The position numbers and the translations under genes were made by a program. A stretch of DNA of 64,000 nt from Lytechinus pictus (taxonomy: Eukaryota). Within the stretch, counting starts at the first letter, position 1; every line of letters starts with the position of its first letter. A model generated the notes under the pieces. The model did not search any database. It saw nothing but the letters and a program-made list of their open reading frames with translations, and was not told where the DNA came from. Shown one piece after another: positions 3,596 through 40,826 of the stretch. Where the stretch lies: positions 248,001 to 312,000 of the forward strand of contig NW_026974151.1 of assembly GCF_037042905.1 (NCBI RefSeq). The letters are read 5' to 3'.

Positions 3596-3663
<68 letters not shown>

Positions 3664-3815
3664 GTTGGCTGCCAAGTTTCATTGAATGGAAGTCAGCTCA
3701 CCCTGATTTCCAATCGAAGAAGTAGTTGCACAGATTAGATTTGGACAATTTTATTGAATTACCAACAAATATTCAAATGCCACATGCTAAATATTTAAAC
3801 CAGTGTTTAATCCTT

Positions 3816-3846
<31 letters not shown>

Positions 3847-17440: not shown

Positions 17441-19622
17441 CACTGGGCAATATGTTACCGATTACCAATATTACCGGATATTACCGGTAATAACACCCCA
17501 AAATTTGACTAAGACCAAATATTACCTTTATTACCATGTTATTACCCAAGTGATACTACCTGTTACTGTTATCACCCCCATGAAACCGACATTTTACCTA
17601 TTTACAACAGGGTGATGAGGGGTAATATGGGTAATGTTGAAAGGCTTCGATTGGTAATAACCTTGGAAACTTGAGTTATAACAGTAATATCTTACAGCAA
17701 TCCCAGTGAATTTTTCAAGTCCAAAAAGTTACTGTTATCACCCCGATGAAACCGACATTTTACCGAGTTACAACAGGGTGATGAGGGGTAATATGGGTAA
17801 TGTTGAATGGATTCGATTGGTTATAAAATTGCGAACTTGAGTAATAACAGTAATCTTACAGCAATCCCAGTGAATTTTTCGAGTCCAAAAATTACTGTTA
17901 TCACCCCGATGAAACCGACATTTTACCGAGTTACAACAGGGTGATGAGCGGTAATATGGGTAATGTTCGATTGGTTATAACATTGCGAATTTGAGTAATA
18001 ACAGTAATCTTAAAGCAATCCCAGCGAATTTTTCAAGTCCAAAAAATTACTGTTATCACCCCGATGAAACCGACATTTTCCGAGTTACAACAGGGTGATG
18101 AGGGGTAATATGGGTAATGTTGAATGGTTTCGATTGGTTATAACATTGCGAATTTGAGTAATAACAGTAATCTTACAGCAATCCCAGTGAATTTTTCAAG
18201 TCCAAAAAATTACTGTTATCACCCCGATGAAACCGACATTTTACCGAGTTACAACAGGGTGATGAGGAGTAATATGGATAATGTTGAATAGTTTCAATTG
18301 GTTATAACATTGCGAATTGGAGTAATAACAGTAATCTTACAACAATCCCAGGGAATTTTTCAAGTCCAAAAAATTACCGTTATCACCCCGATGAAACCGA
18401 CATTTTACCGAGTTACAACAGGGTGATGAGGGGTAATATGGGTAATGTTGAATGGCTTCGATTGGTTATAACCTTGGAAACTTGAGTAATAAGAGTAATT
18501 CCAACTATTTTTCTAAAAACTGTTATCACCCTCATGAAACCGACATTTTACCGAGTTACAACAGGGTGATGAGGGGTAATATGGGTAATTGTTGAATGGC
18601 TTCGATTCGGGTATAACATTTGCAAACTTGAGTAATAACAGTAATCCCAACTATTTTTTTTAAAAACTGTTATCACCCTCATGAAACCGACATTTTACCG
18701 AGTTACAACAGGGTGATGAGGGGTAATATGGGTAATGTTGAACGGCTCTGATTGGTTATAACATTGCGAACTTGAGTAATAACAGTAATCTTACAGCAAT
18801 CCCAGTGAATTTTTCGAGTCCAAAAATTACTGTTATCACCCCGATGAAACCGACATTTTACCGAGTTACAACAGGGTGATGAGGGGTAATATGGGTAATG
18901 TTGAATGGTTTCGATTGGTTATAACATTGCGAACTTGAGTAATAACAGATATCTTACAGCAATCCCAGCGAATTTTTCAAGTCCAAAAAATCACTGTTAT
19001 CACCCCGATGAAACCGACATTTTACCGAGTTACAACAGGGTGATGAGGGGATATGGGTAATGTTGAATGGTTTCGATTGGTTATAACATTGCGAACTTGA
19101 GTAATAACAGTAATCTTACAGCAATCCTATAGTGAATTTTTCAAGTCCAAAAAATTACTGTTATCACCCCGATGAAACCGACATTTTACCGAGTTACAAC
19201 AGGGTGATGAGGAATAATATGGGTAATGTTGAATGGTTTCAATTGGTTATAACATTGCGAATTGGAGTAATAACAGTAATCTTACAACAATCCCAGGGAA
19301 TTTTTCAAGTCCAAAAAATTAATGTTATCACCCCGATGAAACCGACATTTTACCGAGTTACAACACGGTGATGAGGGGTAATATGGGTAATGTTGAATGG
19401 CTTCGATTGGTTATAACATTTGCAAACTTGAGTAATAACAGCAATCTTACAGCAATCCCAGCGAATTTTTCAAGTCCAAAAAATTACTGTTATCACCACG
19501 ATGAAACCGACATTTTACCGAGTTACAACAGGGTGATGAGGGGATATGGGTAATGTTGAATGGTTTTGATTGGTTATAACATTGTGAAATTGAGTAATAA
19601 CAGTAATCTTAGAGCAATCCTA
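17441..19622 (+). repeat. 164-bp tandem array, left block (~12-13 monomers plus a unique CACTGGG-initiated 5' end)
   Basis: Monomer GTGAATTTTTCAAGTCCAAAAAATTACTGTTATCACCCCGATGAAACCGACATTTTACCGAGTTACAACAGGGTGATGAGGGGTAATATGGGTAATGTTG...AATCTTACAGCAATCCCA, counted as 164 bp. Confidence 0.95.
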
Positions 19623-19794
19623 CACTCTAAATTACAGGGATTTAAAATTTAAATCTTAAGCCGGATTTGAATGAAATTAAATCGATAAAGATTGATTTTT
19701 AATCTTAAAAGATTGCTAAACTGGTTCTTAATCTGAGTTTCAAATATATTGATTTCAATCCCAAAAGATTAAAAAAAGTTTAGAAAATTAACGG

Positions 19795-19896
19795 CAAATT
19801 GACCAATCACGGTGATAAGATTTTGTCACATGACATGTGACATGCGAGCGCGGGAATATTTTTCGATCTGCGATCTGCTACCGTCGGCGTTTGAAA
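19795..19896 (+). promoter_or_regulatory. Putative promoter/5' leader of element B
   Basis: CCAAT at 19803, a CpG-rich patch in AT-rich DNA, directly upstream of AAAATGG at 19897 (good Kozak context). Confidence 0.45.
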
Positions 19897-22800
19897 ATGG
19901 CTGACATCATGCTGAAGGCGTTTTTAGAGGAAACGCTAGGTCCAAAGGCAGGGGATACAGAGAGATTACTAGAGGGTAAGTACATTTTGTATTATCTAGG
20001 CTATCTGTATTGGAATAACTAATTTTATGACAGCAGAAAGAGTGTTTTCACAAGTAGGGAACAGTCCCGGAACGGTCTAACTTTTGTACCGGTAACTAAC
20101 GCCTGCGATCACGACGCGTCGTGATCAAGCTCAAGCTAGCTGTAATGGTGCTGGTCCCGATCTGCTACCTTAAAAATTTGACTTGAAAAAGAGCAAGAAA
20201 TATGTTTGCATTCATGTAATCATTACTCTCATGCTAAACCTGATATTCTAAAGAGTAAGCATTCCAAAGTCTTATGAAAATTTGAGCAAGAACATTGTTA
20301 TTTTAACAGAAAAGACGCCCGTGTCATTCTAAAATTGCAGGCCAGTTCCGAGACAAGCCACAAGGCACAAGGCCAGGGCGCTGCGCAGTCATAATGGGCA
20401 CTCTTACCGAGTACTATAGTCCTACCATCATACTAGATTCATACATGTAACAGTTACATGTACGCCTTGCTTAGACAGCCGTTAAGTCCAGGGTGAGGTG
20501 GGTGGAACTAAGGCCATGGGATAAAGTATGATGGTTGCCCCTAACTTGTTACTGTTAGCTAGAAAAATGTTTGTATTCCTGTAAATTCTAATGAATAATC
20601 ATGCTAAAATCTCATGAAAATTGGAGCAAGAACACTGCCATCATGCATCGCGTGCGCTGACGTCGCTTCTTTTTAGCTCCGTTTTTTTGCTTATTTTTCC
20701 GTTTTAATTTTGCTAAGTTTTAATTAATTTCTAGTTCAAATGGGTTGCGGACCCTTTTAGAAACTGTAGATTACCACATTTTTATATATTTCACTCGCCA
20801 AAGGTGAAATTCTAGCGCCAAAATATTTTACATTTCTCACACGTATTGTGCCACACCTCAGACGAGGCGCTCGCGCACCACTCCCCACTACTGTCGGGGT
20901 GGCTTTTCCTAGTGGTTTGTGTGTTGATTGGGAGTTTTTCCCAGCGTTGGTTATAACGTAGGCCTATTACGGTCTGGATTTTTATATCGGTTTTCTACAT
21001 TTTTAAGGTGTACATTTATATTATATCGGTCTTCAGTGTGGTGATATTGTTTTTTGGAATTGGAGTGATTTTACTGGATATTTTAGAGTGTTTGTGTATT
21101 GGAATGTCCTTGTAAAGTTGTGGAATTTGTGGTATTTGGGTGTGTCTGGCAAATGTTGGCGGCCATTTTTAAACTTTTAAATCAGCATTCACTCCACGTT
21201 TATCTTGACTTTTTTGCATTGCCTGGCATCTTCATCTGCTCTGCATTCTGTGCATTGCTTGCATATTCTCTATCAACATGAGCTACCTCAAGTCTTCATC
21301 ATGTTCTTTCCTTGTGGCAACCTTCATATGCATTGGTTTACGCCTTTTTTCGACAAGTCCCTCAGTGGTGTTGGATGTTTTGGACAACCAGCTTTTATTG
21401 GACCACTGGACTGCTCCTCTTGCTAGCCATTCTCTCAAGTTCGACTGCTGCCCGGTGAGTCTGTTCCATGTTTCCATTCATAGTAATCAATATCTTGGTA
21501 TGAAATTCGTATTACGACAAGCAAATTTTAAATCTGGCTTGTCTTTGCTATTGATGTTAGCTGGAGATATCAATCCAAATCCTGGACCTGCTTTAGATTC
21601 TGGTCCAAAGGATACTGGCATGAAAAACAAATCAAAATACAAGACTAAATATCCTTGTCAAATATGCAATAAAGCTGCCAAATGGGGCCAAGATTGTATT
21701 CAATGTGATTCTTGTAATGGTTGGTTTCATAAAGTCTGTTTGGGCATGAGTCAGGAGGTTTTTGATGCCCTTGCTAAACATGACTCTTATTCTTGGATTT
21801 GTTGTGACTGTGGAGCACCAAACTTTCATTCTTCCTTATTTATGGATGTGAGTGATATTCAAACTGATAATAGCTTTGAGATACTGAATGATTGTGATCT
21901 TGTATTGTCAAACAACGATTTACATATTGGACAACCTATCCAAACATCTAGTCCTAAATGTAAAAAAGTAAAATTTGAATTAAATGAACAGGTTAAAGCT
22001 AAACCTAAACCTAAACCTAAACCTAAATCTAAACCAAAACCAAAGACTCGTAACCTTAAGATCCTAAATGTGAACTGTCAAAGTGTACGAGCCAAGTTAG
22101 CAGGATTCCAGTGCCTCATTAATGATGAGGATGCTGATATCATTGTGGGAACTGAGTCGTGGCTCCATTCTGGTATTGTCTCTGGTGAAATTTTCCCATC
22201 AAATTACAATGTTTTTCGTAATGATAGAGATAGTGATAGTGATAATCTATCAAAAATCAATTGTAACTGGGGACTTACCCAAAGAGTGGCTTAATGCCAA
22301 TGTCTCCCCTATATTAAAAAAGGGTGACAGGAAACTTCCACAAAATTACAGACCTGTCTCTTTGACTTGTATTTTATGCAAACAACTCGAACACATAATT
22401 TATACTAATATTATGCAACATTTTGATAAACACTCAATACTCTGTGAAAATCAACATGGATTTAGAAGAGGTAGGTCTTGTGAAACTCAATTAGCTGGAT
22501 TAGTAAATGACCTAGCACAGACACTCAATGATCGTGGCCGAACTGATGTCTGTATTATGGACTTCAGTAAGGCGTTCGATACTGTACCGCACAAGAGACT
22601 CTTATTGAAAATCGATAACCTTGGTATTAGAGGGAAAACCAAAGCCTGGATTGATACTTTTCTTACTAATCGAAACCAGAGAGTTATACTGGATGGTCAA
22701 ACCTCCATTGATGCTTTGGTGACCTCTGGGGTCCCGCAGGGCACAGTCCTCGGCCCTCTCCTGTTTCTTGCATATATAAACGATCTACCAGACCAAATTA

Positions 22801-25800
22801 ATGCCAGGGTAAGGATGTTTGCCGACGATGTTATATTGTACAGAAATATTTCCTCAACTGAAGACTGTGATCTTCTTCAAAGTGACATTAACAAATTGTG
22901 TGAATGGCAAAATATCTGGCAAATGCAATTTAACACATCAAAGTGTTTTATTATGCATGTTACACACAAGAAGAAAATCACTCCCTATAAATACCATCTA
23001 GGGAACTCTGAACTGGGCATCGTTGACAGCTATCCTTATCTAGGTGTTCATTTGTCAAATAATTTGTCTTGGACTAATCATATTAATACAACCGTAAACA
23101 AAGCAAACAGTATACTTGGATTGTTGAAACGTAATCTATGGAATTGTTCAACTCAAACTAAAGATATCGCCTACAAGACTCTTGTGCGGCCTAGGCTGGA
23201 ATATTGTTGCTCTGTGTGGGATCCCCACCAGAAAAATCTTCAAGATAAACTTGAAAAAACTCAAAGAAGAGCAGCACGATTTGTATCTAACAAATATCAA
23301 CGCACAAGTAGTGTTACTGAAATGATGAGTATTCTAAAATGGGATACTCTCCAAGACAGGAGAACAAGTAGCCGGCTCATATTTTTGTTTAAAGAAATAC
23401 ACAATATAACTCCATGTAATATAAATCAAATCACTTCAAAAGCATCCTCCAGGCCAACAACTAGAATAACCAGACAGTCTCATGACTTAAACTTCAATAT
23501 AATCAGAGCAAATAAGGATTGCTACAAATATTCCCTCTACCCTCGTACAATTGTAGAGTGGAATTTACTTTCTCCCACCACTAAAAATGCACCTGATCTA
23601 GCTGCATTTAAGAAACAGCTAAGCAAAAACATGTTAAAGCTAACTAAAAGAAGTATATAGCGGCAGCGATTGCATGAATGGCCTGCACGTTTATAGCCTC
23701 TTGAGGCGTTCAAGTGCAGTATTTACAAGACAAGACAAGACAAGTTAGAATTGTTATTTTAACAAGAATTAAAAGACGGCCATGACCTGTGTTGTTTTAA
23801 CATTAAAGAGTGGATTAGTGCCCATGTCTGCGAACTCGCGTAACTGCGCAATTCAAATAGGTCTAGGTTTAGATCTAGACCTAGCTCTAGAACAATTAAA
23901 ACATCACATTCACATGCAATATCAATTTTTAGTCTATCTAGATCTAGTCTACAAAGACTATTTGATGCAAAAATGACGCAAAAATATTGAGAAAAGTCCT
24001 GATATCATTTGAGCAGTTTAATTTGCAAGCCCTGAACTGCATGTAAAATGATATTTAGAATCTAGACTATTGCATGTTTTGTTGTAGACTAGATAGGTCT
24101 AGGTCTACTCTTACATTAGACTCTCTAGATCTAACGCAGGTACGCATCTTCGCAGACATGGGCGCTGTGCATTAATGGGCACTCCTGCCAAACATTCCTG
24201 TAATGATTATGAATTATCAAATATTGAAGGAGTTACGGAAAGCTACGCACTTCTCGCCGCGACTCGTGTCATAAATTGTAATATTTCAGATCTTCTGGAC
24301 CCAGTCCTACTCCTAGATCTAGGTCTAGACTCTAGTCTGGAGTGCCCGTGATTTGACTAAAAATTATAATTTCACACACAAGAACACTAAATTATATAAC
24401 ACACAGGAATCAAAACATTGCTCACACACAAAAAGTCACTGACCACATCCAAATTCAGTATTAAAACTCCCAAAATATATTTAAAAAGCTGATTTTCATT
24501 ATCAAAATTGCGATTTCGGCTCAATATTTTCAAAGGTCTTAAAAATGGGGTCACTTAAAACCAGCTATAATTTTGTTGTTTGTTGCAAGCCACGAAGGTG
24601 ATGGTATGGCTGGAAAAAAAAATCAAACGAACACCCGAGACTCTCCAAATGCGATCATTGTCCTAATCAAAGCATTGTTGTAGTTTATAAACACACGTGC
24701 TTAATAATATATTGTATGCACAGGGAAAATTAATTATTTCCTTCTGAGAAAAATGGAAATTTATGGAATATTTTGTACACAAAATGAGAGCTGCTCGCAT
24801 GTGACATCACAGAGTTGCCAGTTTGCGTTTGATCGATTGCAACTTTTAAAAATCATAATTTTTTTTTATCCTTCATCGATTTCTTGTCAAACCTTCACTG
24901 ATCTATTTTTCTCATTTTTCTGCTTTTGTTAAAACCAACTTGATATCAGGGTCGACTTCCCCTTTAAAAGAGTTATCACAGAATTATTTAGAATTTTGAA
25001 AATAAATCTATATTTTCAATATATTTTTGTTTCAGAGAACTTTGGCAACACTTCCCAAAGGAGACACACATTCTGTCATAATCGCTTCACTTTGATAGTC
25101 CCGTCCCATTTGTGATACGGATCAGATTCTGGACCCAAAAATACGCATTTGGCGTTTTAGAATTACATTGCATTACAGTATTCAGGAAATGTGATGTTTG
25201 AATTAGATCATGGAATTGTTATGCTTGAAATGTGGAAGACTTATTCATGCTGATACAGTGAGAGAGTATGCTCGTCATTTACGTATGTCCCATGCCGTCT
25301 TTGGGAATGGAGAGACACTTGTTTGTGGTCAAAATGGTTGTATGCGAACATTCACCCTCATGAACTCACTGTTACGCCACATACGTCGACACCATGCCCA
25401 CATGCCAGTTGCACATAATGACCCTTTACATGGTGACTTTGTTCATGAAGAGGATGATGATGAAGGAGAGGATGACCAAGCAAACTATGATGAGGATGTA
25501 GAAGATGCTGAACATGTTTATGAACCGGAAGATTTCAATCTAGGTTCATTGAAGAAGCTGGCTATGAATTTGGTCATAAAATTAAGGTCTTCAACATCAA
25601 CCACATACTCTACCATTCAAAGTGTCATCACTTGTACGAAAAACATGTTTCAAGAAACACTTTCATCTCTACGGCAAAGAATGATAACTGTAATGCAACA
25701 TCATGGAATCGACACCAACTCACCTGATGTACAGGAGCTTAATCATCAATTTCAAGAGCTTGAAAATCCTTATATGGGTATTGAAACACCAGGTCAGCAG

Positions 25801-28800
25801 ATGAAATACATGATTGAAAACTTAATGTTGGTTCCTCCAGTTGAGCGGGCATTGGGAACAAGAATTGATCACAAGTTGGACAGAAAAACTGGCCAAACAA
25901 ACCAAGTAGTTGTCACAGAGACATTCCAGTACCTCCCTATGCTAGAAGTTCTCAAACTTGTACTGAAACCAGATGTAAGAGCCCTCATTGACTCAGAAAT
26001 TAAATCACCAGAAGGCATCTTAAGGGGATATATGGATGGCACACAATATCATCAGCATGAAGTGTTGCATAATCACCCACATGCTCTTAGAATTGTACTC
26101 TACTATGACGATGTGGAAGTCGTTAACCCTCTAGGGAGCAAAAAGGGCCTCCACAAATTGGGCCTGTTTTATTACAGCATTCAAAATTTCCCACCATGTT
26201 ACAATTCCACTATGAACAGTATATTTCTTCTAGCAGTATGTTATAGCTCAGACGTGAAGAAATATGGCTTCAATGCTATTTTGCGACCATTTCTTGATGA
26301 AATGAAAAGACTTGAAAGTGAAAATGGCGTAGAGATCCTCATTAATGATAACATGATAGAGGTTCATGGTACTTTGGTCTCATTTGTTGGGGACTCACTT
26401 GCAGCACATGATATTTTGGGTTTTCTAAGCCCATCAGCAAGAAAGCTGTGCAGGTTGTGCAAAGCGACTCGAGAAGAAGCCCAAACTAAGTTTTCAGAAG
26501 AGGACTTTCAACTGCGTGAAATGGATGAACATGATGAAATAGCTCAGCGTGCTGCCAACAGGGGACGTGGTGATCCAGATAGTGGCATAAGAAATGAATG
26601 CCCATTGAATAGGTTGAGTTCTTTCCACTGTGTGAATAATTTTAACTTTGATGTTATGCATGACCTACTTGAGGGAGTGTGTCAGTATGAGATTAAACTC
26701 ATACTTAACCAACTTCTCTTTGTTGATCACTTCTTAACATTGGGTGAACTTAATCACCGCTTATCATCTTTTCATTATGCTTTCAACGATAAGAAAAACA
26801 AGCCAACTTGCCTTTCAATGGAACGAATAAGGAATGCACAAGACCACAAATTGGGTGAAAAGGCCTCCCAAATGTGGTGTCTAACTAGGATGTTGCCTCT
26901 GCTGATTGGGGATCTTATTCCTCAGGACAACATGCACTATGAACTACTACTGTTGCTGTTACAGTGCTTGGATATAAGTTATTCACCAGTAGTTTCTATA
27001 CCTCAGACTGTAATACTGAAATACCTGATTTGCGATCATCACAGTCATTTCAAGCTCGTTTTTCCTGAAAGCCGAATGATAAACAAGCACCATCACATGG
27101 TGCACTACCCGATGTGCATGAGAATGTGTGGACCACTAGTACTTTCACAATGTCTACGGTTTGAAATTAAGCACAATTTCGGCAAGAGATTGGCTGCAAT
27201 TAATTGTAATTTCAAAAACATTTGCAAAAGCATCGCTGCCAAGCACCAGGTGATTCAGTGTGCTGTTTGGATGGGAAAAGGTCTAAGAGAAGATTTTGAA
27301 GGCATTAATGGAAGTGTTGTTACAGTTTCATCATTGGAAGGAAGTCAGTGTATCATTGAAAGCCTTCACCTTCATGAGGACACTGAAATCTTTTCAGCCA
27401 GTAAAGTTACAGTGTATGGAATCGAGTACATTCCTAACCTCTACTTGGCAACAGCCATTGATGATGATGAACCACAGTTTAGTCGAATAGTGGTTATTTT
27501 GGTCCCAGGGACAACAGCAGGAGACATCAAATTTGTTGTTAGAAAGTGTTGGAATAGAGGGTTTTTCCGCCATTTCCATGCCTTCTGTGTCCAAGAAATG
27601 GAGATGTTTGAGTACAGTTTGGTGACGCTTGATGACCTTATTGATCATGTGCCTTTGACTGCATTATCATCCTACGAGAACAACAGTTCAAGAGTGTACC
27701 TGTGCCCTCGACATAGTCTAATACAACATAGGTACATATGAATTCAATGATGTGATTATACATGTATGCTCCTGCCCCATTAATGAATTTTGAGTTTTGT
27801 ATTAATATAACTTTTTAGGGGGGGGCCTCGCAAACCAAAGTTGGCATGCACACGAAAATGTGCACAAAGAGAACATTAGACCTCATCTATGAAAAAAAAA
27901 ATAAAAAAGGCTTTTGGACATTTTCAAGTTGTTCATGTCTATGAATTTCTTACATGTACATGTATAGTTCATCATCTAGATCAATTTTCAGTTTGAATAA
28001 ATTATAAATCAAGAGGGAGACCTGACTGGCTTACAACCAAACTTTACATGTATATCTCACTTAATTAGCTTTTTCTTTCATACACAAAATAATCAAAATA
28101 AATTCATATTTTTGTTCGGGTTGGTCTTTGGTCATGAACGATCACATGCATAATTGCATGTACTTCTATCAAATGATGTCTGATTTTAAAAATGTAGTGT
28201 TCAAAGAAAATAAAAACTTTAAAGAAAAGGGTGAAATTGCACCGCTGAAAACGTGGAGGATTACTCATCAAAATTTGCCTATTGCCCCCCCCCCCTCCCC
28301 TGCACATTTTTGGTTAATACATGTACATAAAATATGTACATTGTACATGTATAGTATTTCCTAAATTTCACTTGTGCATCTTTCCTTTTTCCCCGTATAG
28401 AGAATGATGTTGACCTAGAGGTTCTACGCACAATGTCAGAGGGGGATCTTGAGAAACTCGGAATATCGTTTGGGTTGAGACGAAAATTGACTCTGGCAAT
28501 TAGTAAGTCACAAAAACAACTGGAGAGTACCACTGATGGAGTCGTTATGCATGTAAGTATTTTCTTTTGTAGTCCGATTATGTACTTTAAATAAATGTAT
28601 GTCGGAATATGAAATGCTATAAATGAAGAATGTGTTATTTTTTTGTAAAGATGGATGATTTAGATTAGCTTCAGTTGCCTTTAATGCTGTCATGTATTGA
28701 TGTCAAGTGCGGTTGTGTAAAGGTTGAGCTAGAAGTTGGTTAAATTTTGATTGTCTTTATTGCATTATACTACATGTAGGTGTAAAAAAAAATTAAAAAT

Positions 28801-31800
28801 TGACACTTATGATATCTAATAACTCAAAAGTGAACTGTTATCAAGCTCAAATTTTTTTGTTTTTTTGTCTTGGTTTCTCAACAAGTGAAAAACTCATATA
28901 ATATTCCAACATCATTTTATCAAGTTTTATTTGAAGGAATGTCATGAATGAATGTCAATCCATAGTAATTTTTTTTTTCTGTGATTAATTTGTATTTGTA
29001 TTTTTTTTTAATTTTTTATTTTTTCATTTTTACCCATAGGATGTTCCAGCAACTTCTGATAGCCCAGTTCCCAAAAAATTGAAAAGTGTAATGGTAAGCT
29101 GTATTCCCTAATGCTATTTACAAGATTTAGTTATGTCTTCAAATTTGAAATAAAACAATGAAAAAATTAACTCGGTATGATGGTGAAAATTTCCTTGTTT
29201 AAATTTATTGGTACCCATTCCAGGTCAGTTATCCCAATTTGAAAACACTCATTTGTTTGGTACAAAAGAAAAATCGAAATAGTTTTCAACTGAATTAAAG
29301 TTTTTGGCATTTTAACATAAATAGAATGGAACTAAAACTGCTTGAGCTAAATGTACTTTGATATTAGCTAATAAGACCATATTTTATCCCTAAATGTACT
29401 GAAATAAGTTTGTTTCTTTTTTGGCCATGAATAATGCCACTTGAAAAAATATAATGGAATGCTTACATGATGTTTTAAATTTGTACAGTATCTGTAATAT
29501 GATAAAATCATACTTTTAGTTCAGATAATAATTGTCAATATATCATCAATGAATTAACACACGGCGTTACTTTTACAGAATCTCAAAGAAGCAATGAATA
29601 ATTCATCTGAAGGACGAGAGCTAGTGAAGCATCTTGATGGTGGTTCTACATTGTCTACCAAGCAAAGGAAGGCACTAGTGAAGATGGCTGTTGGACATCT
29701 TGTGGACCTACATGGCTTGTAAGTAGTGAACACTCGATGTAAATTACACATAAACTGCCCATGAAAACTACATTGAATGAATTTCCTTACTGTTGTTAAT
29801 ACTTTTTACATGCAGCTTTATATACGACCTCAAAGGTAAAAAGGCTAGGCTATTTTGGTGAACTCTCAGTGGGGGGAGGGGGAATCTTTGCCTTGGATTG
29901 ACCACAACTGGTCATGTAGAAAAAGCATCCAATAATGAATAAGCCTGTTAAAGTTCATACCCTTATCTCAAATGGTTTTTGAACAAATTATAGGCTAATT
30001 TGGGCCACTCATAGCATGGTACCTGATGGTCAAGACTTCCTAAATTTATATCAAAATATGTGTATTACTCTAAGCGCTAAAGTCATGAAAATGAGATAGA
30101 GATGTTTGGAAAAGTTTGTTTTGCAAATTTTCGAAATTCCAGACCACAAGACTGTCCATGTCAAACTCATCTTACTACCATATGTCCATAAACAGTCAAT
30201 GGCTGCTTGTATAATTTTTCTTTTTTCTTTCTTTTAAACATTCATGAAGGTGGCCACCAACTAAACAGAAGACCTTGTTGGCTAAAGAGATAGTTAGTAC
30301 ATGGCCTTCAACCAAAGATACCACACCTGGAATGGAAGGGCATGTAAGTAAACATTGAATGTTAACATATAGAAAAAATTGAAATGGTGACATACATGTT
30401 CATGTGCATGCTTGTACTTAGTTCATATGGTTTAATGAAATATGTATTAAGAGAACAATGTGCCAAATATTTTTTGTTATATAGATGATTTTATATTGTA
30501 AATATTAAAAAAAAAATACACAAACTATGAATTTTAGTAGGCTTCATGGGAGTATTTCTTCAAGAATTTTTAGTGTAACTCCAGTTAGATCGAATGCACT
30601 ATCTGGATATGAATGAAAAACAAGTCAGAGAAAATCTTGGAGCCAGGAGGGATTCGAACCTGCAACATCTGCTATCCGGGCAGCGACTACACCACCAGGC
30701 CATCTCTGGTCCATGGAATAGACACGATGAATTAGAATCAAATATCCTGAGTCTCTTAATTCTGATTTATTAATATCCATGGTCCCCAGTAGGACAATAT
30801 GAATCCTACTAACATTCATAACCTATTGTCCTACTGGGGACCCTGAATATTAATAAGTCAAAATTAAGAGATTCAGAGATATTTGATTCTAATTCATCGT
30901 GTTTATTCCACAAACCAGAGATGGCCTGGTGGTATAGTCGCTGCCCAGATAGCAGATTCAAATCCCTCCTGGTTCTTCTTAAAAAACACAAAATATGTAA
31001 TTGAATCTCTAAACATTCAAACTCATCATTTAAGTTAAAAATACCAGGATTTCTGTATGTGACGTTCTTATCAGGTGAACACTCTGCAATATGCCCTATG
31101 TACAGTAACCAGCATTGGATGCTCTTGTGATTCACTTGTAAAGACCCTAGGTTTATTTCTTCCATGTGGGTGTGACCTTCTTTTAGTGATTTTTTAATCT
31201 AAAATGCTATGAGTCAGACAGAACACATGAGCAGAATAAGCAAAATTCACTTACAAATTTGAATTTATTACTGTTGTTCATGAATGATATCTGTTTAGCT
31301 AACTATACAGGTATTTATTCTCAAACAAAAAAACAAAAAAATGTATTTTTAAAAATTAATTTTGGTGTGTTGCTATTACATCCTAATACTGGAAGTTCTT
31401 TTTTTTTTTCTTCTTCTTCTTCAATGAAGGAACATTTCTTCTCACATGATGGGTCTGGATTCATCCAGTACAGACTAAAAAATGTGAGAACATCTCAAAA
31501 TGAAAGAATGAAGACTCCAAAAAAGAAGTCTGAGAAAGAAATGAATGAAACCTCAGCAGATGAAGCAGATGAAGCAGCCACTGATGCATTCCAACAGCAG
31601 GATATCCAGCAAAAGGTAATGGATAACTAAAAGATGTATGTGATGTTTCATGAGAATTGTATCAGAGATACTTGTGGATCATGTTTATCAAGAGATGGGT
31701 GTTAAATTGGTTTAAGAAGTCTATAAGAAGAGTAATCATTTTTGTGTATTTGGTTTTGAACCTGTAAGTATGGGAAGCCACTAAAACAGCATACTTCCTC

Positions 31801-34800
31801 TTATACCCTCTCTCCTTTCTTTCTTCCCCTCCTTCTCATTGTTTTTCACTTTTGCATGTGCTTACTGCCATGTTTCCATTCCGTTCATCATCTCCTTATA
31901 GAGCACTTTACAAGTTATAAGTAACTGACCAAAAATCTTGCTGTGTATTACCCTGGTCATTGGATTCAATCTCGATTCTGCATTAACAGTTCAGGGTTCA
32001 GTTTGTCTGCCATTCTCCCTTTATTTGTGTCTGTCTGCATTGTAGGTGAGTGTGTCATTTGAAATGTGGACTATTTGTGGTTGAGGCTGTCATTTTTCAA
32101 AGAGGGTCCCAAATATGGGGATTAACCTGGACAATGATTTTATGATCTCAGGATATGCACATTTCCTGACCATCTTACAGATTACTGACATTGATTTAGG
32201 AATTACATGCACTTTATGAGGAAAAAGCATTTTATGGTTTCTTTTCATTGTTTTATAACCCTTCTAGGAGCATGTCACATTTTCATTTGCAGTATCTTAT
32301 TCTTGTTTCAGATTGATTGGATGAAGTTTTCACCACCTCATCGTGGAAATATGTCTATGCACATGGAGTATTTCGAGGACACGCACAAGTACAGACGGCA
32401 CATCATTATGGATAGTGGTAATCCTATCACTATTACAGAAGTGTTGACTTTGTTTCCGAGATATCAAGACATTCCACAGTTGGTAAGTTATTTGTGTTAT
32501 GAAATTATCATGTCATTACTCTCACATCATTGATACTTTTGAATTTCTTTTATTTTTTAGAGGTGGTCAGGAAAGAAATTTGGGCTAAATTGTATCCCCC
32601 GAACAGAGTTTTTAGTGTGGGTGGGGTCATCGTTGCCATGGTAACATTTTTTGTGGAAATATTTTATAACCTGTAACTTTTGCTGTTTTTTGCCCAACTG
32701 TCATGATATTTGGTAAACAGGACCGATATAACATGGAGTTGTCAAAAATGGAATTTTCAGAAGTGCCACGCCAAAGCGTTACCATGGCAACCACACATTT
32801 TCTTGTGAGCGCTCTACCGGCTGCAGTTCTTCTCGGATTATCTTCAAATTTGGCGTGAAGGTGCATTATGATAAAGGGAAGACACCTATCAATTTTGGTG
32901 TGGTGGTAGGACAGTTTTGGGGATACATGTGCTTGGACGGGTACCCCGAGTGCTCTAGTTAATTTGCAAATTTAGAACCAAAATATTATTACCCAAATCA
33001 TCGGGAGCAATAGAAATATAATTGTGATGACTACTGCGCCTTATAATTTGAAAGTGTCTGCACTTTTGGGGCAATTATGCTTTCATTACATCTATGTGTA
33101 TAGATTAAATCTGTGGGTGATGAAGTGATAATAAAATACTGGCTTGAGTTACTCTTAAGGGATATGGAATATATTGCCCTTGAAATGATATTGTACTTGC
33201 CTTCTCTTGATTGTAGCTCTGTCAAAAATGTCTGATATCCCCCTAAAGTCCATCCAATATTATGTAAGTATTTTAATTGTTTTTGATAAAATTATTTTGT
33301 CATCCATTTGCATTGTTTCCCCAGATTGGAATAGATTTCTCCATGATGCACAAAGCTGAATCGGAAAAGTTCATTACCCAATGGTCAACCTTGAGAGAGA
33401 AAATCATACTCCTGGGCCAGAAAGAATATCATAGCGTCAAGCAAGTGATAGAGCGTTACCAGGATACGGACAGTAGGTTCATGATTTTACTTCATTTCTT
33501 GAATTTGAATCAACTCATGGTTTTAAGACCTCATGCATCGTTGAACTTATCATAGGTCCCTGGAAGTTCTTGGAAATATTTTCAAAAGTTTTATTTTCAG
33601 AATTTATTCATTCCAGAGTAAATAGTAATTCATGCACAGTAATGTTGTATTTTTCACTGAATTTATCCTTCATAATTTTATTGTGAGCGCAAAGCGCGAG
33701 CCGAAAATTTTAGAGCTCCCAAAGGAAGCAAATTATGCATCATAATGAACCTGAATACCAAATTGATGATCGACAAAGGTATTGATTTACATTTTACATG
33801 TTTAATGAAATGTTTTTTGGTATAAAAACACGGAAAAAGAGCATGAAATTTTGTCATGGAAATTTTTTTTTTTTTTTTTTTTGGGGGGGGGGCTGCAGCC
33901 CCCCCCCCCCACTCAAGCTCCCCCACCGGTACGCCAGTGGCAGCATGGATTTTTTTTTTCTATTCAAATGGTGACATGTGATCAATAGATCACCTTGTTA
34001 AATTCTCCTAAGGTATAAAGGTCTTAAAAATATTCTACTTTATTCATTTTTATTTATTCATGTTTCAGGAGATCTTTGTGCACTTCTGGTTGTTCTCTAT
34101 GTGCTCCATCGGCCTGTGACAAAATCGAAGGTCAACTGTAGCAGGTCTGCTGCAGTGCAGTACCTGATACAGCATGTGCCAGTGAGTAATTGTTGGTTTC
34201 CTTTCGATTCTGAAAATTTTGCACTACTACATTATTAGACATGGTTCTTGGATATATGATCTACATGTAGATGATTATGTCATACATATCTTAGCCTCTC
34301 TCATAGTAATAGCCACACTAAGGTCAAGAGTCATTTGTGAGTTGTGATAAGGTAAATTTACCTTTTTGTGGGTCTTGGTAACTGTCCCTTTGTGCTATAC
34401 ATGTAACTATACAATCATTATTGTAGACTGAAATGCCACCCACACTAAAATACACACACCCTGAAAAAAAAATCCTCTTTCAAAATGCTGATATCTTTGA
34501 ATTAAAGGTAATCTTGAGTATTGGTAATGTAAAAAAATATTGTCCCACAGAATCACAAGAAATTTACACTGAATGTTCGGAACTATAAATAAATGACAAC
34601 TGCCAAGTTATTTTGAAAGAAAATGTATAACAGCTGAGTAATGAGCAAATGAAGACAATTTTGACGTCCCGTCAAAATGAGCTTGCCTCGCTCAGCTATG
34701 CAGCGACCACGTGCAAAGCATATGTGGACATATGTGGACATATTTAACCACTTTCATTCCGATTTATTTTTCATTACCACAACTCAAGATTATCTTTAAG

Positions 34801-35178
34801 CAGGATGCAGGATAATGTTGTCATTAACATCTACATATATATGTTTTCAAATTCTAATTACAGCAAGGAACAAACATGGAGGAAGCTATAAACAAGATCA
34901 AGAAGGAATACAGGCAGCCCCTCATAGTAGCCCTCGGAAAGGAGACTGGACAGAAGCAGTACTTCTTGTGCCTGGACAGCATTCCTGTGAGCGCCGGGGC
35001 AACAATAGTGGAAGCTTTTGACAAGTTATTCAAATGTTTTTTCATCTTTGGCGTTACCTATCCTGACATTCTCTCCCATTTCTACGATTATTTTGCGGCG
35101 TTTGTCTACGAAATTTGGCCAACGCAGAGGGTTAAGCCTACTGTGCGTTCATTTGCATGTGCCATTAAGTCCTCTTAA
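19897..35178 (+). CDS. SAM-domain accessory protein of transposon B (SAMD3-like), 10 exons, 483 aa
   Basis: Exons 19897-19975, 28401-28552, 29040-29093, 29579-29718, 30250-30343, 31430-31615, 32312-32482, 33325-33472, 34069-34181, 34864-35178. All GT-AG, 1452 nt in total, one open frame. SAM signature LEENDVDLEVLRTMSEGDLEKLGISFGLRRKL spans exons 1-2. Confidence 0.88.
20632..23744 (+). mobile_element. LINE (CR1-group/RTE-X-like) with internal deletion, inserted in intron 1 of element B
   Basis: PHD finger (CQICNKAAKWGQDCIQCDSCNGWFHKVC...WICCDC), start of APE (NVNCQSV, GTESWL), RT (DFSKAFD, GVPQGTVLGP, FADD), 3' tail (ACAAG)4. The 5' boundary is approximate: it interrupts a GAGCAAGAA..TTGTTATTTTAACA intron repeat also seen at 20284. 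Confidence 0.88.
21278..23660 (+). pseudogene. LINE ORF (PHD-APE-RT) with most of the endonuclease deleted
   Basis: ORF 21278-22294 stops matching APE after YNVFRNDR. The sequence jumps near 22240 to pre-RT IIYQKSIVTGDLPKEW in another frame (ORF 22122-23660). Confidence 0.85.
25210..27741 (+). CDS. EnSpm/CMC-type DDE transposase, 843 aa, intronless, apparently intact
   Basis: Two N-terminal C2H2 fingers (CLKC..HLRMSH; CGQNGC..HIRRHH), YYDDVEVVNPLG, VGDSLAAHDILGF, CRLC, DVMHDLLEG, KHHHMVHYP, CLRFEIKH. Lies between matching CACTC TIRs. Confidence 0.92.
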   Translation: MELLCLKCGRLIHADTVREYARHLRMSHAVFGNGETLVCGQNGCMRTFTLMNSLLRHIRRHHAHMPVAHNDPLHGDFVHEEDDDEGEDDQANYDEDVEDAEHVYEPEDFNLGSLKKLAMNLVIKLRSSTSTTYSTIQSVITCTKNMFQETLSSLRQRMITVMQHHGIDTNSPDVQELNHQFQELENPYMGIETPGQQMKYMIENLMLVPPVERALGTRIDHKLDRKTGQTNQVVVTETFQYLPMLEVLKLVLKPDVRALIDSEIKSPEGILRGYMDGTQYHQHEVLHNHPHALRIVLYYDDVEVVNPLGSKKGLHKLGLFYYSIQNFPPCYNSTMNSIFLLAVCYSSDVKKYGFNAILRPFLDEMKRLESENGVEILINDNMIEVHGTLVSFVGDSLAAHDILGFLSPSARKLCRLCKATREEAQTKFSEEDFQLREMDEHDEIAQRAANRGRGDPDSGIRNECPLNRLSSFHCVNNFNFDVMHDLLEGVCQYEIKLILNQLLFVDHFLTLGELNHRLSSFHYAFNDKKNKPTCLSMERIRNAQDHKLGEKASQMWCLTRMLPLLIGDLIPQDNMHYELLLLLLQCLDISYSPVVSIPQTVILKYLICDHHSHFKLVFPESRMINKHHHMVHYPMCMRMCGPLVLSQCLRFEIKHNFGKRLAAINCNFKNICKSIAAKHQVIQCAVWMGKGLREDFEGINGSVVTVSSLEGSQCIIESLHLHEDTEIFSASKVTVYGIEYIPNLYLATAIDDDEPQFSRIVVILVPGTTAGDIKFVVRKCWNRGFFRHFHAFCVQEMEMFEYSLVTLDDLIDHVPLTALSSYENNSSRVYLCPRHSLIQHRYI
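30639..30976. repeat. Palindromic element with tRNA-like (A/B box) outer ends
   Basis: Arms ~30639-30800 and ~30825-30976. The left arm on - reads ACCAGAGATGGCCTGGTGGTGTAGTC...GCAGGTTCGAATCCCTCCTGGCTCC. The right arm is the same sequence with a short deletion before the B box. Confidence 0.75.
32575..32960. repeat. Dispersed repeat with GTTGCCATGGTAAC / TTTTGGTGTGGG motifs
   Basis: Related copies at ~49100-49490 and ~62570-63010 (AATTGTATCCCCCGAA, GCTCTACCGGCTGCAGTTCTTCT). Confidence 0.7.
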
Positions 35179-35186
35179 TTTACTCT

Positions 35187-37968: not shown

Positions 37969-37989
37969 TATATAGATCTTACAGTCCAG

Positions 37990-38800
37990 TCCAGTCCAGC
38001 ATAAATGACTTTACCATCATTTCTTTAGAATAGCTACCAGAACATACTAAAAGTTTGAGAAAATTAGAGGGAATTAAAGCCGTAAAATTTGCATGATATG
38101 CAAATTAGCATCTTCCGTATGAGAAAATTCTTTTCCCTATAGATTTCCATGAAAGTGCCACATGAAAACAATGATGATTATATTCATGTTTCCATTGACC
38201 ACATTTTTAGCTTTATAACATGAAAAGTATTTGCCCAATATTCAAATTAACATCAGCGAACAAAGGAAATTCATATTTTTCATATATTTGCATATGTATA
38301 CCATATTGAAATAATTCAAGTGTAAAAAAAATATGCGAATAAACATGATGGGAACATTTTGAGATATTCAAATAAGCTTCCTTCATTGAAATTCTTATTT
38401 TCTCTGTAAAATTGCATTTATTATTTGATTAGAACAAATAATTCGTCTTATCTAATGTTTTGATTCATTTTTTGGGGTTGAATATGCAAATAGGCTTCCA
38501 GCAATAGAAATGAACAAATTCATATTTTCATCATAATTTGGATTATTATCTTTGATTTGGATCTCAGTTACCTATTAAATGTGTTAAAGCCAGTGTATTC
38601 AATGTCTGTGAAAATGATAGACATATTTTCGAACCAATAGTGTGATCCTTATTTGCATATTATGCAAATTTTACTGCTTTCCACTACTTCGATTTTCCTA
38701 AACTTTTATAGTATGTTGTTCTGGTAGCTATTTTAAGTAAATGGTGGTGAAATCGTTTCGGTTGCGATTTGTTTTGGGTTATTTCATATTTTGACTAGAC
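37990..38800. mobile_element. Degenerate inverted-repeat MITE
   Basis: AATAGCTACCAGAACATACTAAAAGTTT...GTAAAATTTGCATGATATGCAAAT mirrored by ATTTGCATATTATGCAAATTTTAC...AAACTTTTATAGTATGTTGTTCTGGTAGCTATT. Confidence 0.6.
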
Positions 38801-40826
38801 CAATATGAATTGAGGTATATGCAAATAATTTAGTTTTTGTTGAGCCACCGAGGTGGATCGAAACTAAGGGATCCTTGGCGGCGTCCGTCCGTCCGTTATT
38901 TGGGGATCAAAGGTCAAATGAGGTCTTGAATAACTGCAACCATTTTTTTTCTCTCTCTCTATTCATACAAGTAAGCTATTCTTGGTATTTCACTATTAAT
39001 CAGAATCAATTTACTAGAATGATTGCGAGACACATGGCTATTGCCTTGTTCTGTTTCCAAAACCGAAAAAAGAAAACCTAGAATATTGATTTTAAAAGAT
39101 TGTCTGTATTGTGAATAACAGTAGAAAAATTGTTGTTGGTAACTTGTTAACTATGCTTGAAATTGTCAGGAATACAAGTTGAAAACAGGAAATTGGAAAA
39201 CAAACCATTATTTTGGGTATAATAACTTTTTTTCTCAGTGTGCATTGTCGCAGTCATTGTTATTAAATCTTATGACCACAATATGAGCATGGTCTTATTT
39301 AATTCACCGATCTCAGGCAGGGTAGGTTCAACTGCCTAATTCCCTTCCAGTGTACAGTCTGTGCAAAGTGGGTTTTCAACATAGCCTATACATGTACGTG
39401 ATGGTCAGTTATAACAGCCTATAAACGTTCTTGATGGTCAGTGATAAAAGCAACCAACAAAAATGTATAAGTGTGCTTAATTTTCTAGTTTGCAGAAGCG
39501 TTATTCTGTATGTGGATGTTTAATTCTCTATTTTGCAAAAAAAGAAAAAGAAAGAAGAATATTCCAATACATGTATGGGTCACTTTCGACAGAGGTCAAA
39601 AGGTCATTGAACTTTCCATGAAAAGCATTGCTGCTTTAAAATGCTTTAAAATGTTAAAGTGTTCCGTCTTTTTGCAGTGTTGTATTAGAAATGGTAACTG
39701 TTTTGCCTCTGTATACTTATTCGTAATATTTCTGCCAATGTATACTAGTAAATCTAAACATGTGTCTGGTTACTTCTTTAGGTCTCTATTTACCATGATA
39801 TTTCATGTATATACATTGTACAATTTTTCAAGCTATTCATCTCTTTAAAGCTCAATTCAAGTTTTGGGAAACAGAATTTTTTTTTTTGTATTTTGCTTCC
39901 ATTTTACAATAATATGGAAGATTTTCTCAATAAACCCCAGTGAACAAAAGGATTTGCCACCAAATATATTCTAAGACTGAATTTGATCAGCAATAGCACT
40001 GAGAAATCATTTCGATCTGGGCCAGTGCCTTTTACTACTTAGCGCTGACCACACGCAAAACAAATGATCGAGCTGCATGCCCGCTATTTGCACCGGACCG
40101 CAGTGATTTGCCTTGCCCACAGCACTGGCTGAATAGCTTACCAATAGTAGCCTCGGTTTCATCAAACCCATCAGATATTAACACTAAATTCGTTGGCAAT
40201 CATGCATAGACCATAACAATATTTGGCACAGGTATATTTATATATAAATGGAATAATATGAGGACATATATGATAGAATTAGAAACTAGAATTGAGCTTT
40301 AACCCTTATCTGACTTGGGGAGGAGGGTCATTTTGACCCCCCCCCCCCCGTACAAAATCCACGACTGTCGTAATGTCTCGCATTTTTTAAGACCAAGTTT
40401 GCCAAAGATATGTTGTGCAAATTGTGTATTTTTCATTTATAAACGTTTTGTTATGTATATTTTTGAGCTTCAATGATATTAATAAATCAAACTTACCAAA
40501 CTTTGATTTTGGAGTGTTCAGTATTCAATTTCATTGCTTCAGCATATCTAGAATGGAGATACTTTGATTTAAATCTCTATGAGGATTTTAAAAAAAGAAG
40601 TCCCGAAAAGGATTGTTTTTCAATCTTTATCAGGGTTAATTTTAATCTAGAAAGATTTATAATTTAAATCTTTTGAACTTATTTTTTAATCCTTTACAGA
40701 TTAAAACTTTTTAATCCTAGCGAAGAGTAATTATCAATCCACATCGATTGGTCCCTACCTACAGTACATGAAAGATTTAAAAATAAATCCTATAGATTTA
40801 AATTTAAATCCCTGTAATTTAGAGTG

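What the first reader, a model, noticed from the sequence alone, without database searches (positions are those of the whole stretch)
19623..40826. Complete, apparently intact two-gene giant CACTA/EnSpm transposon: DDE transposase nested in intron 1 of a 10-exon SAM-domain gene
Seen: perfect 24-bp TIRs, TA TSD, an open 843-aa transposase, and a 483-aa spliced ORF whose ten exons join in frame. The ORF track misses this second gene because it is fragmented. Established: maize En/Spm keeps its transposase ORFs in the first intron of the multi-exon tnpA gene, whose product binds subterminal repeats. Inference: this animal element uses the same layout but a different partner, with an N-terminal SAM (oligomerisation/nucleic-acid binding) domain and a C-terminal region I recall as SAMD3-like. 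A self-polymerising SAM protein could coat or bridge the GATT..AATC subterminal repeats. Such genes are easily annotated as host 'SAMD3-like' genes.
Basis: partly seen in the sequence, partly recalled or inferred. Interest (0 to 1): 0.9.

Follow-up and report, generated by a model that had tools for sequence, protein, structure and literature searches.

The report
Intact two-gene CACTA-type transposon, sea urchin
This is a complete 21-kb cut-and-paste DNA transposon of the CACTA/EnSpm kind in the sea urchin Lytechinus pictus; its transposase gene sits inside the first intron of a second, ten-exon gene that is related to the vertebrate gene SAMD3 and is linked to such transposases in several animal phyla.

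Summary
Window 19623-40826 is bounded by perfect 24-bp inverted repeats (CACTC...) and a TA duplication. Removing the element and one TA restores a 164-bp satellite monomer at 164 of 165 positions. The 843-aa ORF is a full-length CMC (CACTA/Mirage/Chapaev) transposase with two N-terminal C2H2 fingers. Ten GT-AG exons give a 483-aa protein. The RefSeq model LOC129266805 of Lytechinus pictus uses nine of them. Exons 1 and 2 flank the transposase and together score as a SAM domain.

The partner's only significant Swiss-Prot fold matches are mouse and human SAMD3. Its C-terminal domain folds confidently but has no solved relative.

The same element, with identical TIRs and TA flanks, lies at another site in Strongylocentrotus purpuratus. 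Partner and transposase are also linked in a sea cucumber, a starfish, a wasp (again in intron 1) and a killifish (transposase after the partner gene). Both genes show dN/dS near 0.2.

Not shown: spliced reads (read laying failed), alternative splicing, DNA binding by the partner, and mobility of this copy.

Two-protein animal CACTA elements with 2-bp duplications are published (SmTRC1). I found no paper describing the conserved SAMD3-like partner. Unchecked notes from this scan report similar elements elsewhere in this genome.

The parts
19621..19622 (.). Left copy of the TA target-site duplication
   Evidence: the empty-site reconstruction matches a paralogous satellite monomer at 164 of 165 positions.
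19623..19646 (+). 5' terminal inverted repeat, CACTCTAAATTACAGGGATTTAAA
   Evidence: exact match, 0 expected by chance. The identical sequence ends the S. purpuratus copy.
19623..19790 (.). 5' subterminal region with GATTTAAA/GATTAAAA motifs in both orientations
   Evidence: the two 8-mers occur 14 times in the 600 bp of both ends and 3 times in about 20 kb of interior.
19897..19975 (+). Partner gene exon 1 (26 codons plus 1 nt, start of the SAM domain)
   Evidence: identical to the N-terminus of RefSeq P0129. The donor is AGG|gtaagt.
20638..23742 (+). Nested retroelement in intron 1 (PHD-finger ORF and RT ORF, (ACAAG)n tail), absent from the S. purpuratus copy
   Evidence: PHD, RVT_1 at 3.4e-34; 3105-nt gap against the S. 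purpuratus copy.
25210..27741 (+). 843-aa CMC/EnSpm-type DDE transposase ORF with two N-terminal C2H2 zinc fingers, inside intron 1
   Evidence: NCBI also calls a gene over exactly this range. dN/dS is 0.2 against the S. purpuratus copy.
28401..28552 (+). Partner exon 2 (rest of the SAM domain)
29040..29093 (+). Partner exon 3 (18-aa linker)
   Evidence: present in RefSeq P0129.
29579..29718 (+). Partner exon 4
30250..30343 (+). Partner exon 5
31430..31615 (+). Partner exon 6 (skipped in the RefSeq model; conserved in the starfish and sea cucumber proteins)
   Evidence: GMEGH|EHFF matches GLQGHEHYY in homologues.
32312..32482 (+). Partner exon 7
33325..33472 (+). Partner exon 8
34069..34181 (+). 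Partner exon 9
34864..35178 (+). Partner exon 10 with the stop codon
35219..37947 (.). Nested 2.7-kb element bounded by inverted repeats, absent from the S. purpuratus copy
   Evidence: pairs I8 and I10; 35189-38006 has no counterpart in L006.
40560..40826 (.). 3' subterminal region with GATTTAAA/GATTAAAA motifs
40803..40826 (-). 3' terminal inverted repeat
40827..40828 (.). Right copy of the TA target-site duplication

Best explanation
Window 19623-40826 is a structurally complete, potentially autonomous cut-and-paste DNA transposon of the CMC (CACTA/EnSpm-Mirage-Chapaev) superfamily in Lytechinus pictus. It inserted into a 164-bp satellite and duplicated TA.

It carries two same-strand genes. 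One is an intronless 843-aa DDE transposase with two N-terminal C2H2 fingers. The other is a ten-exon, 483-aa gene for a SAM-domain protein of the SAMD3-like family. Exon 1 of the second gene lies upstream of the transposase and exons 2-10 lie downstream, which is the En/Spm tnpA/tnpD layout. The identity, boundaries, gene structures and the linkage of the two genes across phyla are shown here.

The mechanism is inferred, at roughly even odds. The promoter at the 5' end would drive a transcript whose exon 1 is spliced either to exon 2 (partner mRNA) or to an acceptor before the transposase. The transposase would recognise the ends through its zinc fingers and cut. The SAMD3-like protein would act as the TnpA-like accessory factor, binding directly or through the transposase at the GATT(T/A)AAA subterminal repeats and using SAM-SAM oligomerisation to pair the two ends or to regulate the element.
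For: - Exact TIRs, and a TA duplication proven by a paralogous empty site.
- A second copy with identical TIRs and TA flanks lies at an unrelated site in S. purpuratus.
- The transposase is full length against homologues. It keeps all 33 invariant columns of a 19-member alignment. The family hits Transposase_21, DUF4218 and Plavaka and has C2H2 fingers.
- The ten-exon ORF has all GT-AG introns. It is identical to RefSeq P0129 over nine exons. Exon borders fall exactly at contiguous matches in homologues.
- SAM_2 scores above its cut-off across the exon 1/2 junction.
- SAMD3 is the only significant Swiss-Prot fold match, and the Atlas search agrees.
- The two genes are linked in Holothuria, Patiria, Leptopilina (transposase in intron 1, inside long TIRs) and Kryptolebias.
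- Transposase and partner diverge together: Spearman 0.78 over 15 pairs, and the sea cucumber L001 element is nearer the urchin element than other sea cucumber elements in both genes.
- dN/dS is 0.2 for the transposase and 0.2-0.28 for the partner between the urchin copies.
- Subterminal motifs are enriched about 150-fold per base.
- RNA-labelled runs hold 0.19-0.22 of the words of 28300-35300, where the exon fraction is 0.196. They hold 0.58 of the transposase stretch.
Against: - No spliced reads were seen, because read laying failed. The word shares may come from near-identical copies or other species.
- The window's own transposase has no Pfam hit, and the DDE triad is assigned only by conserved blocks.
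- The partner has no recognisable DNA-binding domain and no solved structural relative, so its role is only an analogy.
- The transposase has its own zinc fingers and might not need a partner.
- This copy carries two nested insertions, so it has been in place for some time. Mobility is not shown.
- In the killifish the gene order differs.
Confidence: 0.8

Rival explanations
1. The SAMD3-like gene is a long-term passenger of the transposon rather than a transposition cofactor. It is kept because it helps the element in another way, such as countering host silencing, regulating expression or targeting a tissue. The transposase alone does all the DNA work.
For: - The transposase has its own C2H2 fingers.
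- The partner has no detectable DNA-binding fold.
- The C-terminal domain also occurs behind BED or C2H2 N-termini in other proteins, so the module is portable.
- Gene order differs in the killifish.
Against: - The linkage is ancient and the two genes diverge together.
- The partner is under purifying selection.
- The En/Spm precedent, in which both products are required, is summarised in PMC1636069.
- None of these points separates a cofactor from a useful passenger.
Confidence: 0.25
2. The SAM gene is an ordinary host gene (LOC129266805), and a separate transposase-bearing element merely landed in its first intron. The 24-bp inverted repeats would then bound something else.
For: NCBI annotates the two as separate nested genes with uncharacterised products. 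A retroelement did land in the same intron.
Against: - The TIRs and the TA duplication enclose both genes, and the empty site is reconstructed exactly.
- The whole unit, with the same TIRs, sits at a different site in S. purpuratus.
- No inner TIR pair around the transposase was reported.
- The pairing recurs in other phyla.
- Identical partner proteins occur at several loci in one genome, for example three loci in Planococcus citri.
Confidence: 0.03
3. The copy is intact in sequence but no longer mobile. It is either a silenced resident or a pair of genes on the way to domestication.
For: It carries two private nested insertions of 3.1 kb and 2.7 kb. It lies in satellite DNA, which is probably heterochromatic. 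No insertion polymorphism was tested.
Against: The TIRs are perfect and both ORFs are open. Selection acted on both genes in the lineage. RNA-labelled runs hold words of both genes.
Confidence: 0.3

Closest known systems
Maize En/Spm (CACTA) with tnpA and tnpD
   Same: CACT-type TIRs, subterminal repeats at both ends, and two element-encoded proteins. The transposase reading frame lies in the first intron of the multi-exon gene for the second protein, on the same strand. The background is summarised in PMC1636069.
   Different: The duplication is 2 bp (TA), not 3 bp, and the TIR starts CACTC. The transposase is one uninterrupted ORF with C2H2 fingers. The partner is a SAM/SAMD3-like protein, and Pfam scans of partner homologues gave SAM as their only hit above the curated cut-off. 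Alternative splicing is not shown here.
SmTRC1 and other animal CACTA elements (DeMarco et al. 2006, PMC1636069)
   Same: Animal elements with a Transposase_21-type transposase, 2-bp duplications and a shorter alternatively spliced product proposed to act like TnpA.
   Different: That paper reports CCC-type TIR cores for the other animal elements, in Tribolium castaneum and Aedes aegypti. It found no similarity between the second proteins of different animal elements. Here the second protein belongs to a large family: 928 cluster representatives at E <= 1e-10. In the loci examined it is linked to the transposase in echinoderms, an insect and a fish.
Vertebrate SAMD3 (Q8N6K7, Q8C4H2)
   Same: An N-terminal SAM domain followed by a roughly 400-aa region. 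SAMD3 is the only significant Swiss-Prot fold match, aligned over nearly the whole length. Language-model features score 0.95. One AFDB cluster named SAMD3 matches the C-terminal domain at TM 0.69.
   Different: Identity is only 14-15% and global TM 0.35-0.38. None of the 20 top sequence relatives whose names were looked up carries the SAMD3 name. SAMD3 is described as a host gene. Whether a transposase or TIRs lie near it was not examined.

Membership tests
CMC (CACTA/EnSpm-Mirage-Chapaev) DNA transposons | Terminal inverted repeats beginning CACT(A/G) (CCC in some animal members) | tested here: met
   Perfect 24-bp TIRs begin CACTC. The fifth base differs from the classical CACTA.
CMC (CACTA/EnSpm-Mirage-Chapaev) DNA transposons | Short target-site duplication of 2-4 bp (2 bp in described animal CACTA elements) | tested here: met
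   TA is shown by the empty-site reconstruction at 164 of 165 positions and by the S. purpuratus copy. The 2-bp precedent is in PMC1636069.
CMC (CACTA/EnSpm-Mirage-Chapaev) DNA transposons | Transposase of the TNP2 / Transposase_21 (PF02992) type | tested here: met
   The window protein itself has no hit at E <= 1. Of 19 aligned relatives at 27-58% identity, 8 hit PF02992 (best 4.9e-7), 3 hit DUF4218 and 1 hits Plavaka. Membership therefore rests on transitive homology.
CMC (CACTA/EnSpm-Mirage-Chapaev) DNA transposons | DDE catalytic triad in an RNase H-like fold | tested here: inconclusive
   The conserved blocks LYxDDxE, GDNL and DxMHDLLEG contain D300, D395 and E488. No structure was predicted for the transposase, and there is no solved relative beyond the zinc fingers.
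En/Spm-like two-gene organisation | Transposase ORF inside the first intron of the gene for the second protein, on the same strand | tested here: met
   Exon 1 is 19897-19975, the transposase is 25210-27741 and exon 2 is 28401-28552. The layout is the same in Leptopilina and S. purpuratus.
En/Spm-like two-gene organisation | Both mRNAs made from one promoter by alternative splicing | not tested
   Read laying failed. There is only a candidate acceptor at 25036/25037, and joining exon 1 to it would leave a short upstream ORF.
En/Spm-like two-gene organisation | Second protein binds the subterminal repeats | not testable with these tools
   The repeats exist. Binding needs EMSA or ChIP.
Plant TnpA protein family | Sequence homology of the second protein to TnpA | tested here: not met
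   Pfam scans of five partner homologues gave SAM_1/SAM_2 as the only hits above the curated cut-offs. The resemblance is in layout, not ancestry.
SAMD3-like proteins | N-terminal SAM domain | tested here: met
   SAM_2 scores 21.2 bits against a cut-off of 20.5 on the exon 1+2 peptide. Homologues reach 25-30 bits on SAM_1.
SAMD3-like proteins | The long C-terminal region shared with SAMD3 | tested here: met
   Foldseek against Swiss-Prot gives SAMD3 mouse at 4.6e-9 and human at 3.9e-8, probability 1.00, aligned over residues 19-460 and 48-460. The Atlas score is 0.95. The test used a model of the Patiria homologue, not the window protein. Orthology to SAMD3 was not tested.

The most novel reading that the evidence does not exclude
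The SAMD3-like protein family is the conserved, element-encoded accessory gene of metazoan CMC/EnSpm transposons, and vertebrate SAMD3 is a domesticated descendant of such a transposon gene. SAMD3's function is, to my knowledge, undefined. A side reading: this element family moved horizontally between the Lytechinus and Strongylocentrotus lineages.
Probability: 0.4. Interest if true: 0.75.

Novelty: new variant of a known kind. Interest (0 to 1): 0.62.

Why it matters
Animal CACTA/EnSpm elements are poorly characterised. The one detailed study I could read found second proteins that were not conserved between species.

Here the second protein belongs to a large family that is multi-copy in several species and sits next to CMC transposases in echinoderms, an insect and a fish. 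Its only named relative is vertebrate SAMD3. That has three consequences:
- It gives a concrete candidate for the TnpA-like cofactor of animal elements.
- It flags many genes annotated as 'uncharacterized' or 'SAMD3-like' as probable transposon genes.
- It makes a transposon origin of SAMD3 testable.

The L. pictus copy, with intact ends and both reading frames open, is a natural substrate for a transposition assay in a laboratory model animal.

Tried and rejected
The call still counted and the cap is one, so no junctions were mapped.
- Pfam on the window's transposase gave nothing.
- A search for TIRs around the Holothuria, Patiria and Kryptolebias loci within 10 kb found no CAC...GTG pair, so the ends of those elements are unknown.
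- Fold searches against solved structures found no significant relative, either for the whole partner or for its C-terminal domain alone. Foldseek gave E >= 0.17 and VIA gave Z <= 5.2. Weak BEN-domain and JBP1 DNA-binding-domain rows at Z 3.8-3.9 were disregarded.
- Word-indexed homologue searches with the partner found only 8 proteins. The exhaustive HMMER search was needed.
- P0121 and P0123 are not on record for locus retrieval.
- Literature searches for SAMD3 with 'transposon' or 'domesticated', and for CACTA with 'SAM domain', returned nothing relevant.
- The host-gene-with-an-intronic-transposon reading was considered and rejected.


Full report
**Origin of the window.** A 35,282-bp locus fetched for the RefSeq protein P0129 is identical to window 9897-45178, with 0 mismatches. 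The locus is Lytechinus pictus assembly GCA_037042905.1, contig JAZDCF010000031.1.

**Boundaries.**
- The 24-mer CACTCTAAATTACAGGGATTTAAA occurs exactly twice, at 19623-19646 (+) and 40803-40826 (-). Even at 3 mismatches nothing else matches, and 0 matches are expected by chance.
- The element interrupts a 164-bp satellite, with 12.8 copies at 17563-19620 and 25.8 copies at 40830-45001.
- Joining 19540-19622 to 40829-40910, with the element and one TA removed, matches the uninterrupted monomer at 41898 at 164 of 165 positions without gaps.
- Four monomers carry the AATCCTATAGTGAATT version of the site. None carries the duplicated TATA form.
- So the ends and the 2-bp TA duplication are demonstrated, not just plausible.

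**Transposase.**
- ORF 25210-27741 is 843 aa. It aligns over 99-100% of its length with proteins of 837-854 aa at 50-58% identity. Named relatives come from sea cucumbers, octocorals, Lingula, insects and fishes.
- It has no Pfam hit of its own. Of 19 aligned family members, 8 hit Transposase_21 (tnp2), 3 hit DUF4218 and 1 hits Plavaka. All three are CACTA-associated families to my knowledge.
- A profile of the family matches C2H2 zinc-finger structures over positions 3-85, for example TFIIIA at 1.6e-7.
- The conserved blocks LYxDDxE, GDNL and DxMHDLLEG hold the candidate D300/D395/E488 triad. The assignment is by position only.

**Second gene.**
- Sea cucumber gene models that fuse a transposase to downstream exons (P0007, P0020, P0026, P0027, P0030, P0122) pointed to conserved exons downstream of the ORF.
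- Full-length relatives of 470-530 aa with N-terminal SAM_1/SAM_2 hits come from Apostichopus, Dendronephthya, Paramuricea and Patiria. They tile the window in order.
- Each exon border falls at a contiguous match in the homologues. For example, GMEGH|EHFF aligns with GLQGHEHYY, and LIQHVP|QGTNMEEA aligns with LIQNVPEGTDVEEA.
- The final model has ten exons, all introns are GT-AG, and it gives 1,452 nt or 483 aa.
- RefSeq P0129 (LOC129266805, 421 aa) is identical to this model over nine exons, including the exon 1 to exon 2 join. It skips exon 6, which the starfish and sea cucumber proteins retain.
- NCBI's coding range for that gene is exactly 19897-35178. NCBI calls a second gene on exactly 25210-27741.
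- The exon 1+2 peptide scores SAM_2 at 21.2 bits against a cut-off of 20.5, over residues 19-60. That range spans the junction at residue 26/27. Exon 2 alone scores 17 bits.

**What the partner is.**
- An exhaustive HMMER search with a nine-member profile found 4,191 cluster representatives at E <= 0.001, 928 at <= 1e-10 and 138 at <= 1e-30.
- Named members are all 'uncharacterized' or 'hypothetical', apart from one thrips protein evidently misnamed as dihydroorotate dehydrogenase. They come from echinoderms, a priapulid, wasps, a mealybug, a weevil, a thrips and many teleosts.
- Members are often multi-copy within a genome. In Planococcus citri the identical protein is recorded at three loci.
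- An AlphaFold model of the Patiria homologue (pLDDT 72) has only two significant Swiss-Prot matches. These are mouse and human SAMD3, at E 4.6e-9 and 3.9e-8 with probability 1.00, aligned over almost the whole length. The next hit is at E 0.16.
- The language-model Atlas search puts SAMD3 and SAMD3-like clusters at 0.95.
- The C-terminal 276 residues, folded alone with 55 sequences, give pLDDT 92.8 and pTM 0.91.
- That domain matches AlphaFold-DB clusters at TM 0.7-0.8. Those clusters carry SAM, BED or C2H2 N-termini, and one is named SAMD3.
- No solved structure matches significantly: Foldseek E >= 0.17, VIA Z <= 5.2. The biochemical activity therefore remains unknown.

**Is the pair one mobile unit?**
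- In S. purpuratus (L006) the same element occupies 9724-26599, which is 16,876 bp. It has identical 24-bp TIRs and TA on both sides, in an unrelated flank (cgtcTA...TAggtg). It contains both genes in the same layout.
- In the wasp Leptopilina heterotoma, partner exon 1 (10001-10090) and exon 2 (12821-) flank an open 853-aa transposase (10248-12770). The whole unit lies within inverted repeats longer than 80 bp at about 7636 and 21735.
- In Holothuria the transposase (9875-12445) is followed by the SAM exon at 13039 and by the other exons in order.
- In Patiria a transposase fragment lies upstream of the partner on the same strand.
- In Kryptolebias an open 814-aa transposase begins three bases after the partner's stop. 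The linkage holds there, but the intron-1 position does not.
- Across six elements, transposase similarity and partner similarity rise and fall together (Spearman 0.78 over 15 non-independent pairs). The Holothuria L001 element is closer to the urchin element (54% and 40%) than to other Holothuria elements (35% and 26%) in both genes.

**Selection and age.**
- Between the L. pictus and S. purpuratus copies the transposase CDS is 98.2% identical, with dS 0.047, dN 0.0096 and dN/dS 0.2.
- The partner CDS has dN/dS of 0.2-0.28.
- Introns are about 95-96% identical.
- The S. purpuratus copy has a 1-nt deletion in the transposase and deletions in partner exons 6 and 9. The L. pictus copy is open throughout.
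- From general knowledge, the two genera separated tens of millions of years ago, and neutral sequence between them is largely unalignable. If so, this similarity suggests horizontal transfer. Host divergence was not measured here.
- The extra length of the L. pictus copy comes from private nested insertions. One is a PHD+RT retroelement at 20638-23742. The other is an inverted-repeat element at about 35219-37947.

**Ends.** The 8-mers GATTTAAA and GATTAAAA, counted on both strands, occur 14 times in the terminal 2 x 300 bp and 3 times in about 20 kb of interior. This is the kind of subterminal repeat array that En/Spm TnpA binds.

**Expression.**
- RNA-labelled public runs hold 0.19-0.22 of the sampled words of 28300-35300. 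Exons 2-10 make up 0.196 of that stretch. The same kind of runs hold 0.47-0.58 of the words of the transposase stretch.
- This is compatible with a spliced partner mRNA and a transcribed transposase. However, the runs are coded, may be from several species and may reflect sister copies.
- A candidate acceptor lies at 25036/25037. Joining exon 1 to it would give a 45-codon upstream ORF ahead of the transposase ATG. AATAAA/ATTAAA-type signals follow the transposase stop at 27900, 27996, 28097 and 28209. These points are untested.

**Comparison with the literature.**
- DeMarco et al. 2006 (PMC1636069) described animal CACTA elements with 2-bp duplications. They also described a short alternatively spliced, TnpA-like product. 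They found no conservation of that second protein between animals.
- The present element fits that kind. It adds a second protein that is conserved and widespread.
- No paper in the searchable library links SAMD3, or a SAM domain, with CACTA elements. Repbase entries could not be consulted, so prior curation there cannot be excluded.
- Other first-stage notes of this scan report similar two-gene elements on other pieces of this genome. I did not check them.

**Verdict.** The observation and the structural interpretation are confirmed. The proposed action of the SAM protein is a reasonable but untested analogy. I classify this as a new variant of a known kind.

Noticed in passing
L006:9724-26599 compared with window 19623-40826: The S. 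purpuratus copy of the same element is about 95-96% identical in introns. The transposase dS is 0.047. That seems far too similar for vertical descent between these genera and points to horizontal transfer. The S. purpuratus copy has a 1-nt deletion in the transposase and deletions in partner exons 6 and 9. Its last exon is much more diverged (dS 0.43), as if recombinant.
   Followed up: partly
window 20638-23742: A nested retroelement in intron 1. It has a 338-aa ORF with a PHD finger overlapping a 512-aa RT ORF in another frame, no endonuclease domain detected, and an (ACAAG)n tail. It is absent from the S. purpuratus copy.
   Followed up: partly
window 35219-37947: A nested 2.7-kb element bounded by 31-34-nt inverted repeats. 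It contains a 238-nt-arm palindrome at 35921-36402 and is absent from the S. purpuratus copy.
   Followed up: no
window 2638-9048: A second SAMD3-like partner gene of a different subfamily, closest to the partner parts of Holothuria P0027, P0030 and P0150. No transposase match lies anywhere else in the window, so its transposase is probably beyond the window start or lost.
   Followed up: partly
L006:3781-6347 and L006:28082-32098: In S. purpuratus the element is flanked upstream by a different CMC transposase (35% identity) and downstream by exons of a different SAMD3-like gene. It looks as if the element inserted between the two genes of another element of the same superfamily.
   Followed up: no
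window 14639-17086 (-) and 51920-54252 (+): An 815-aa LINE ORF with endonuclease and RT domains lies on the minus strand. Two ORFs of 513 and 211 aa without Pfam hits lie in the region another note calls element C.
   Followed up: no
window 30640-30975: A pair of inverted copies of a short repeat in intron 5. Its outer ends resemble a tRNA 3' end (GGATTCGAACC), so it may be a SINE-like insertion. It is also present in the S. purpuratus copy.
   Followed up: no
L004:7590-7720 and 21650-21790: The Leptopilina element carrying the same two-gene layout has inverted repeats longer than 80 bp that begin around TAATCCACATT rather than CACT. Terminal sequences therefore vary widely within this group.
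   Followed up: partly
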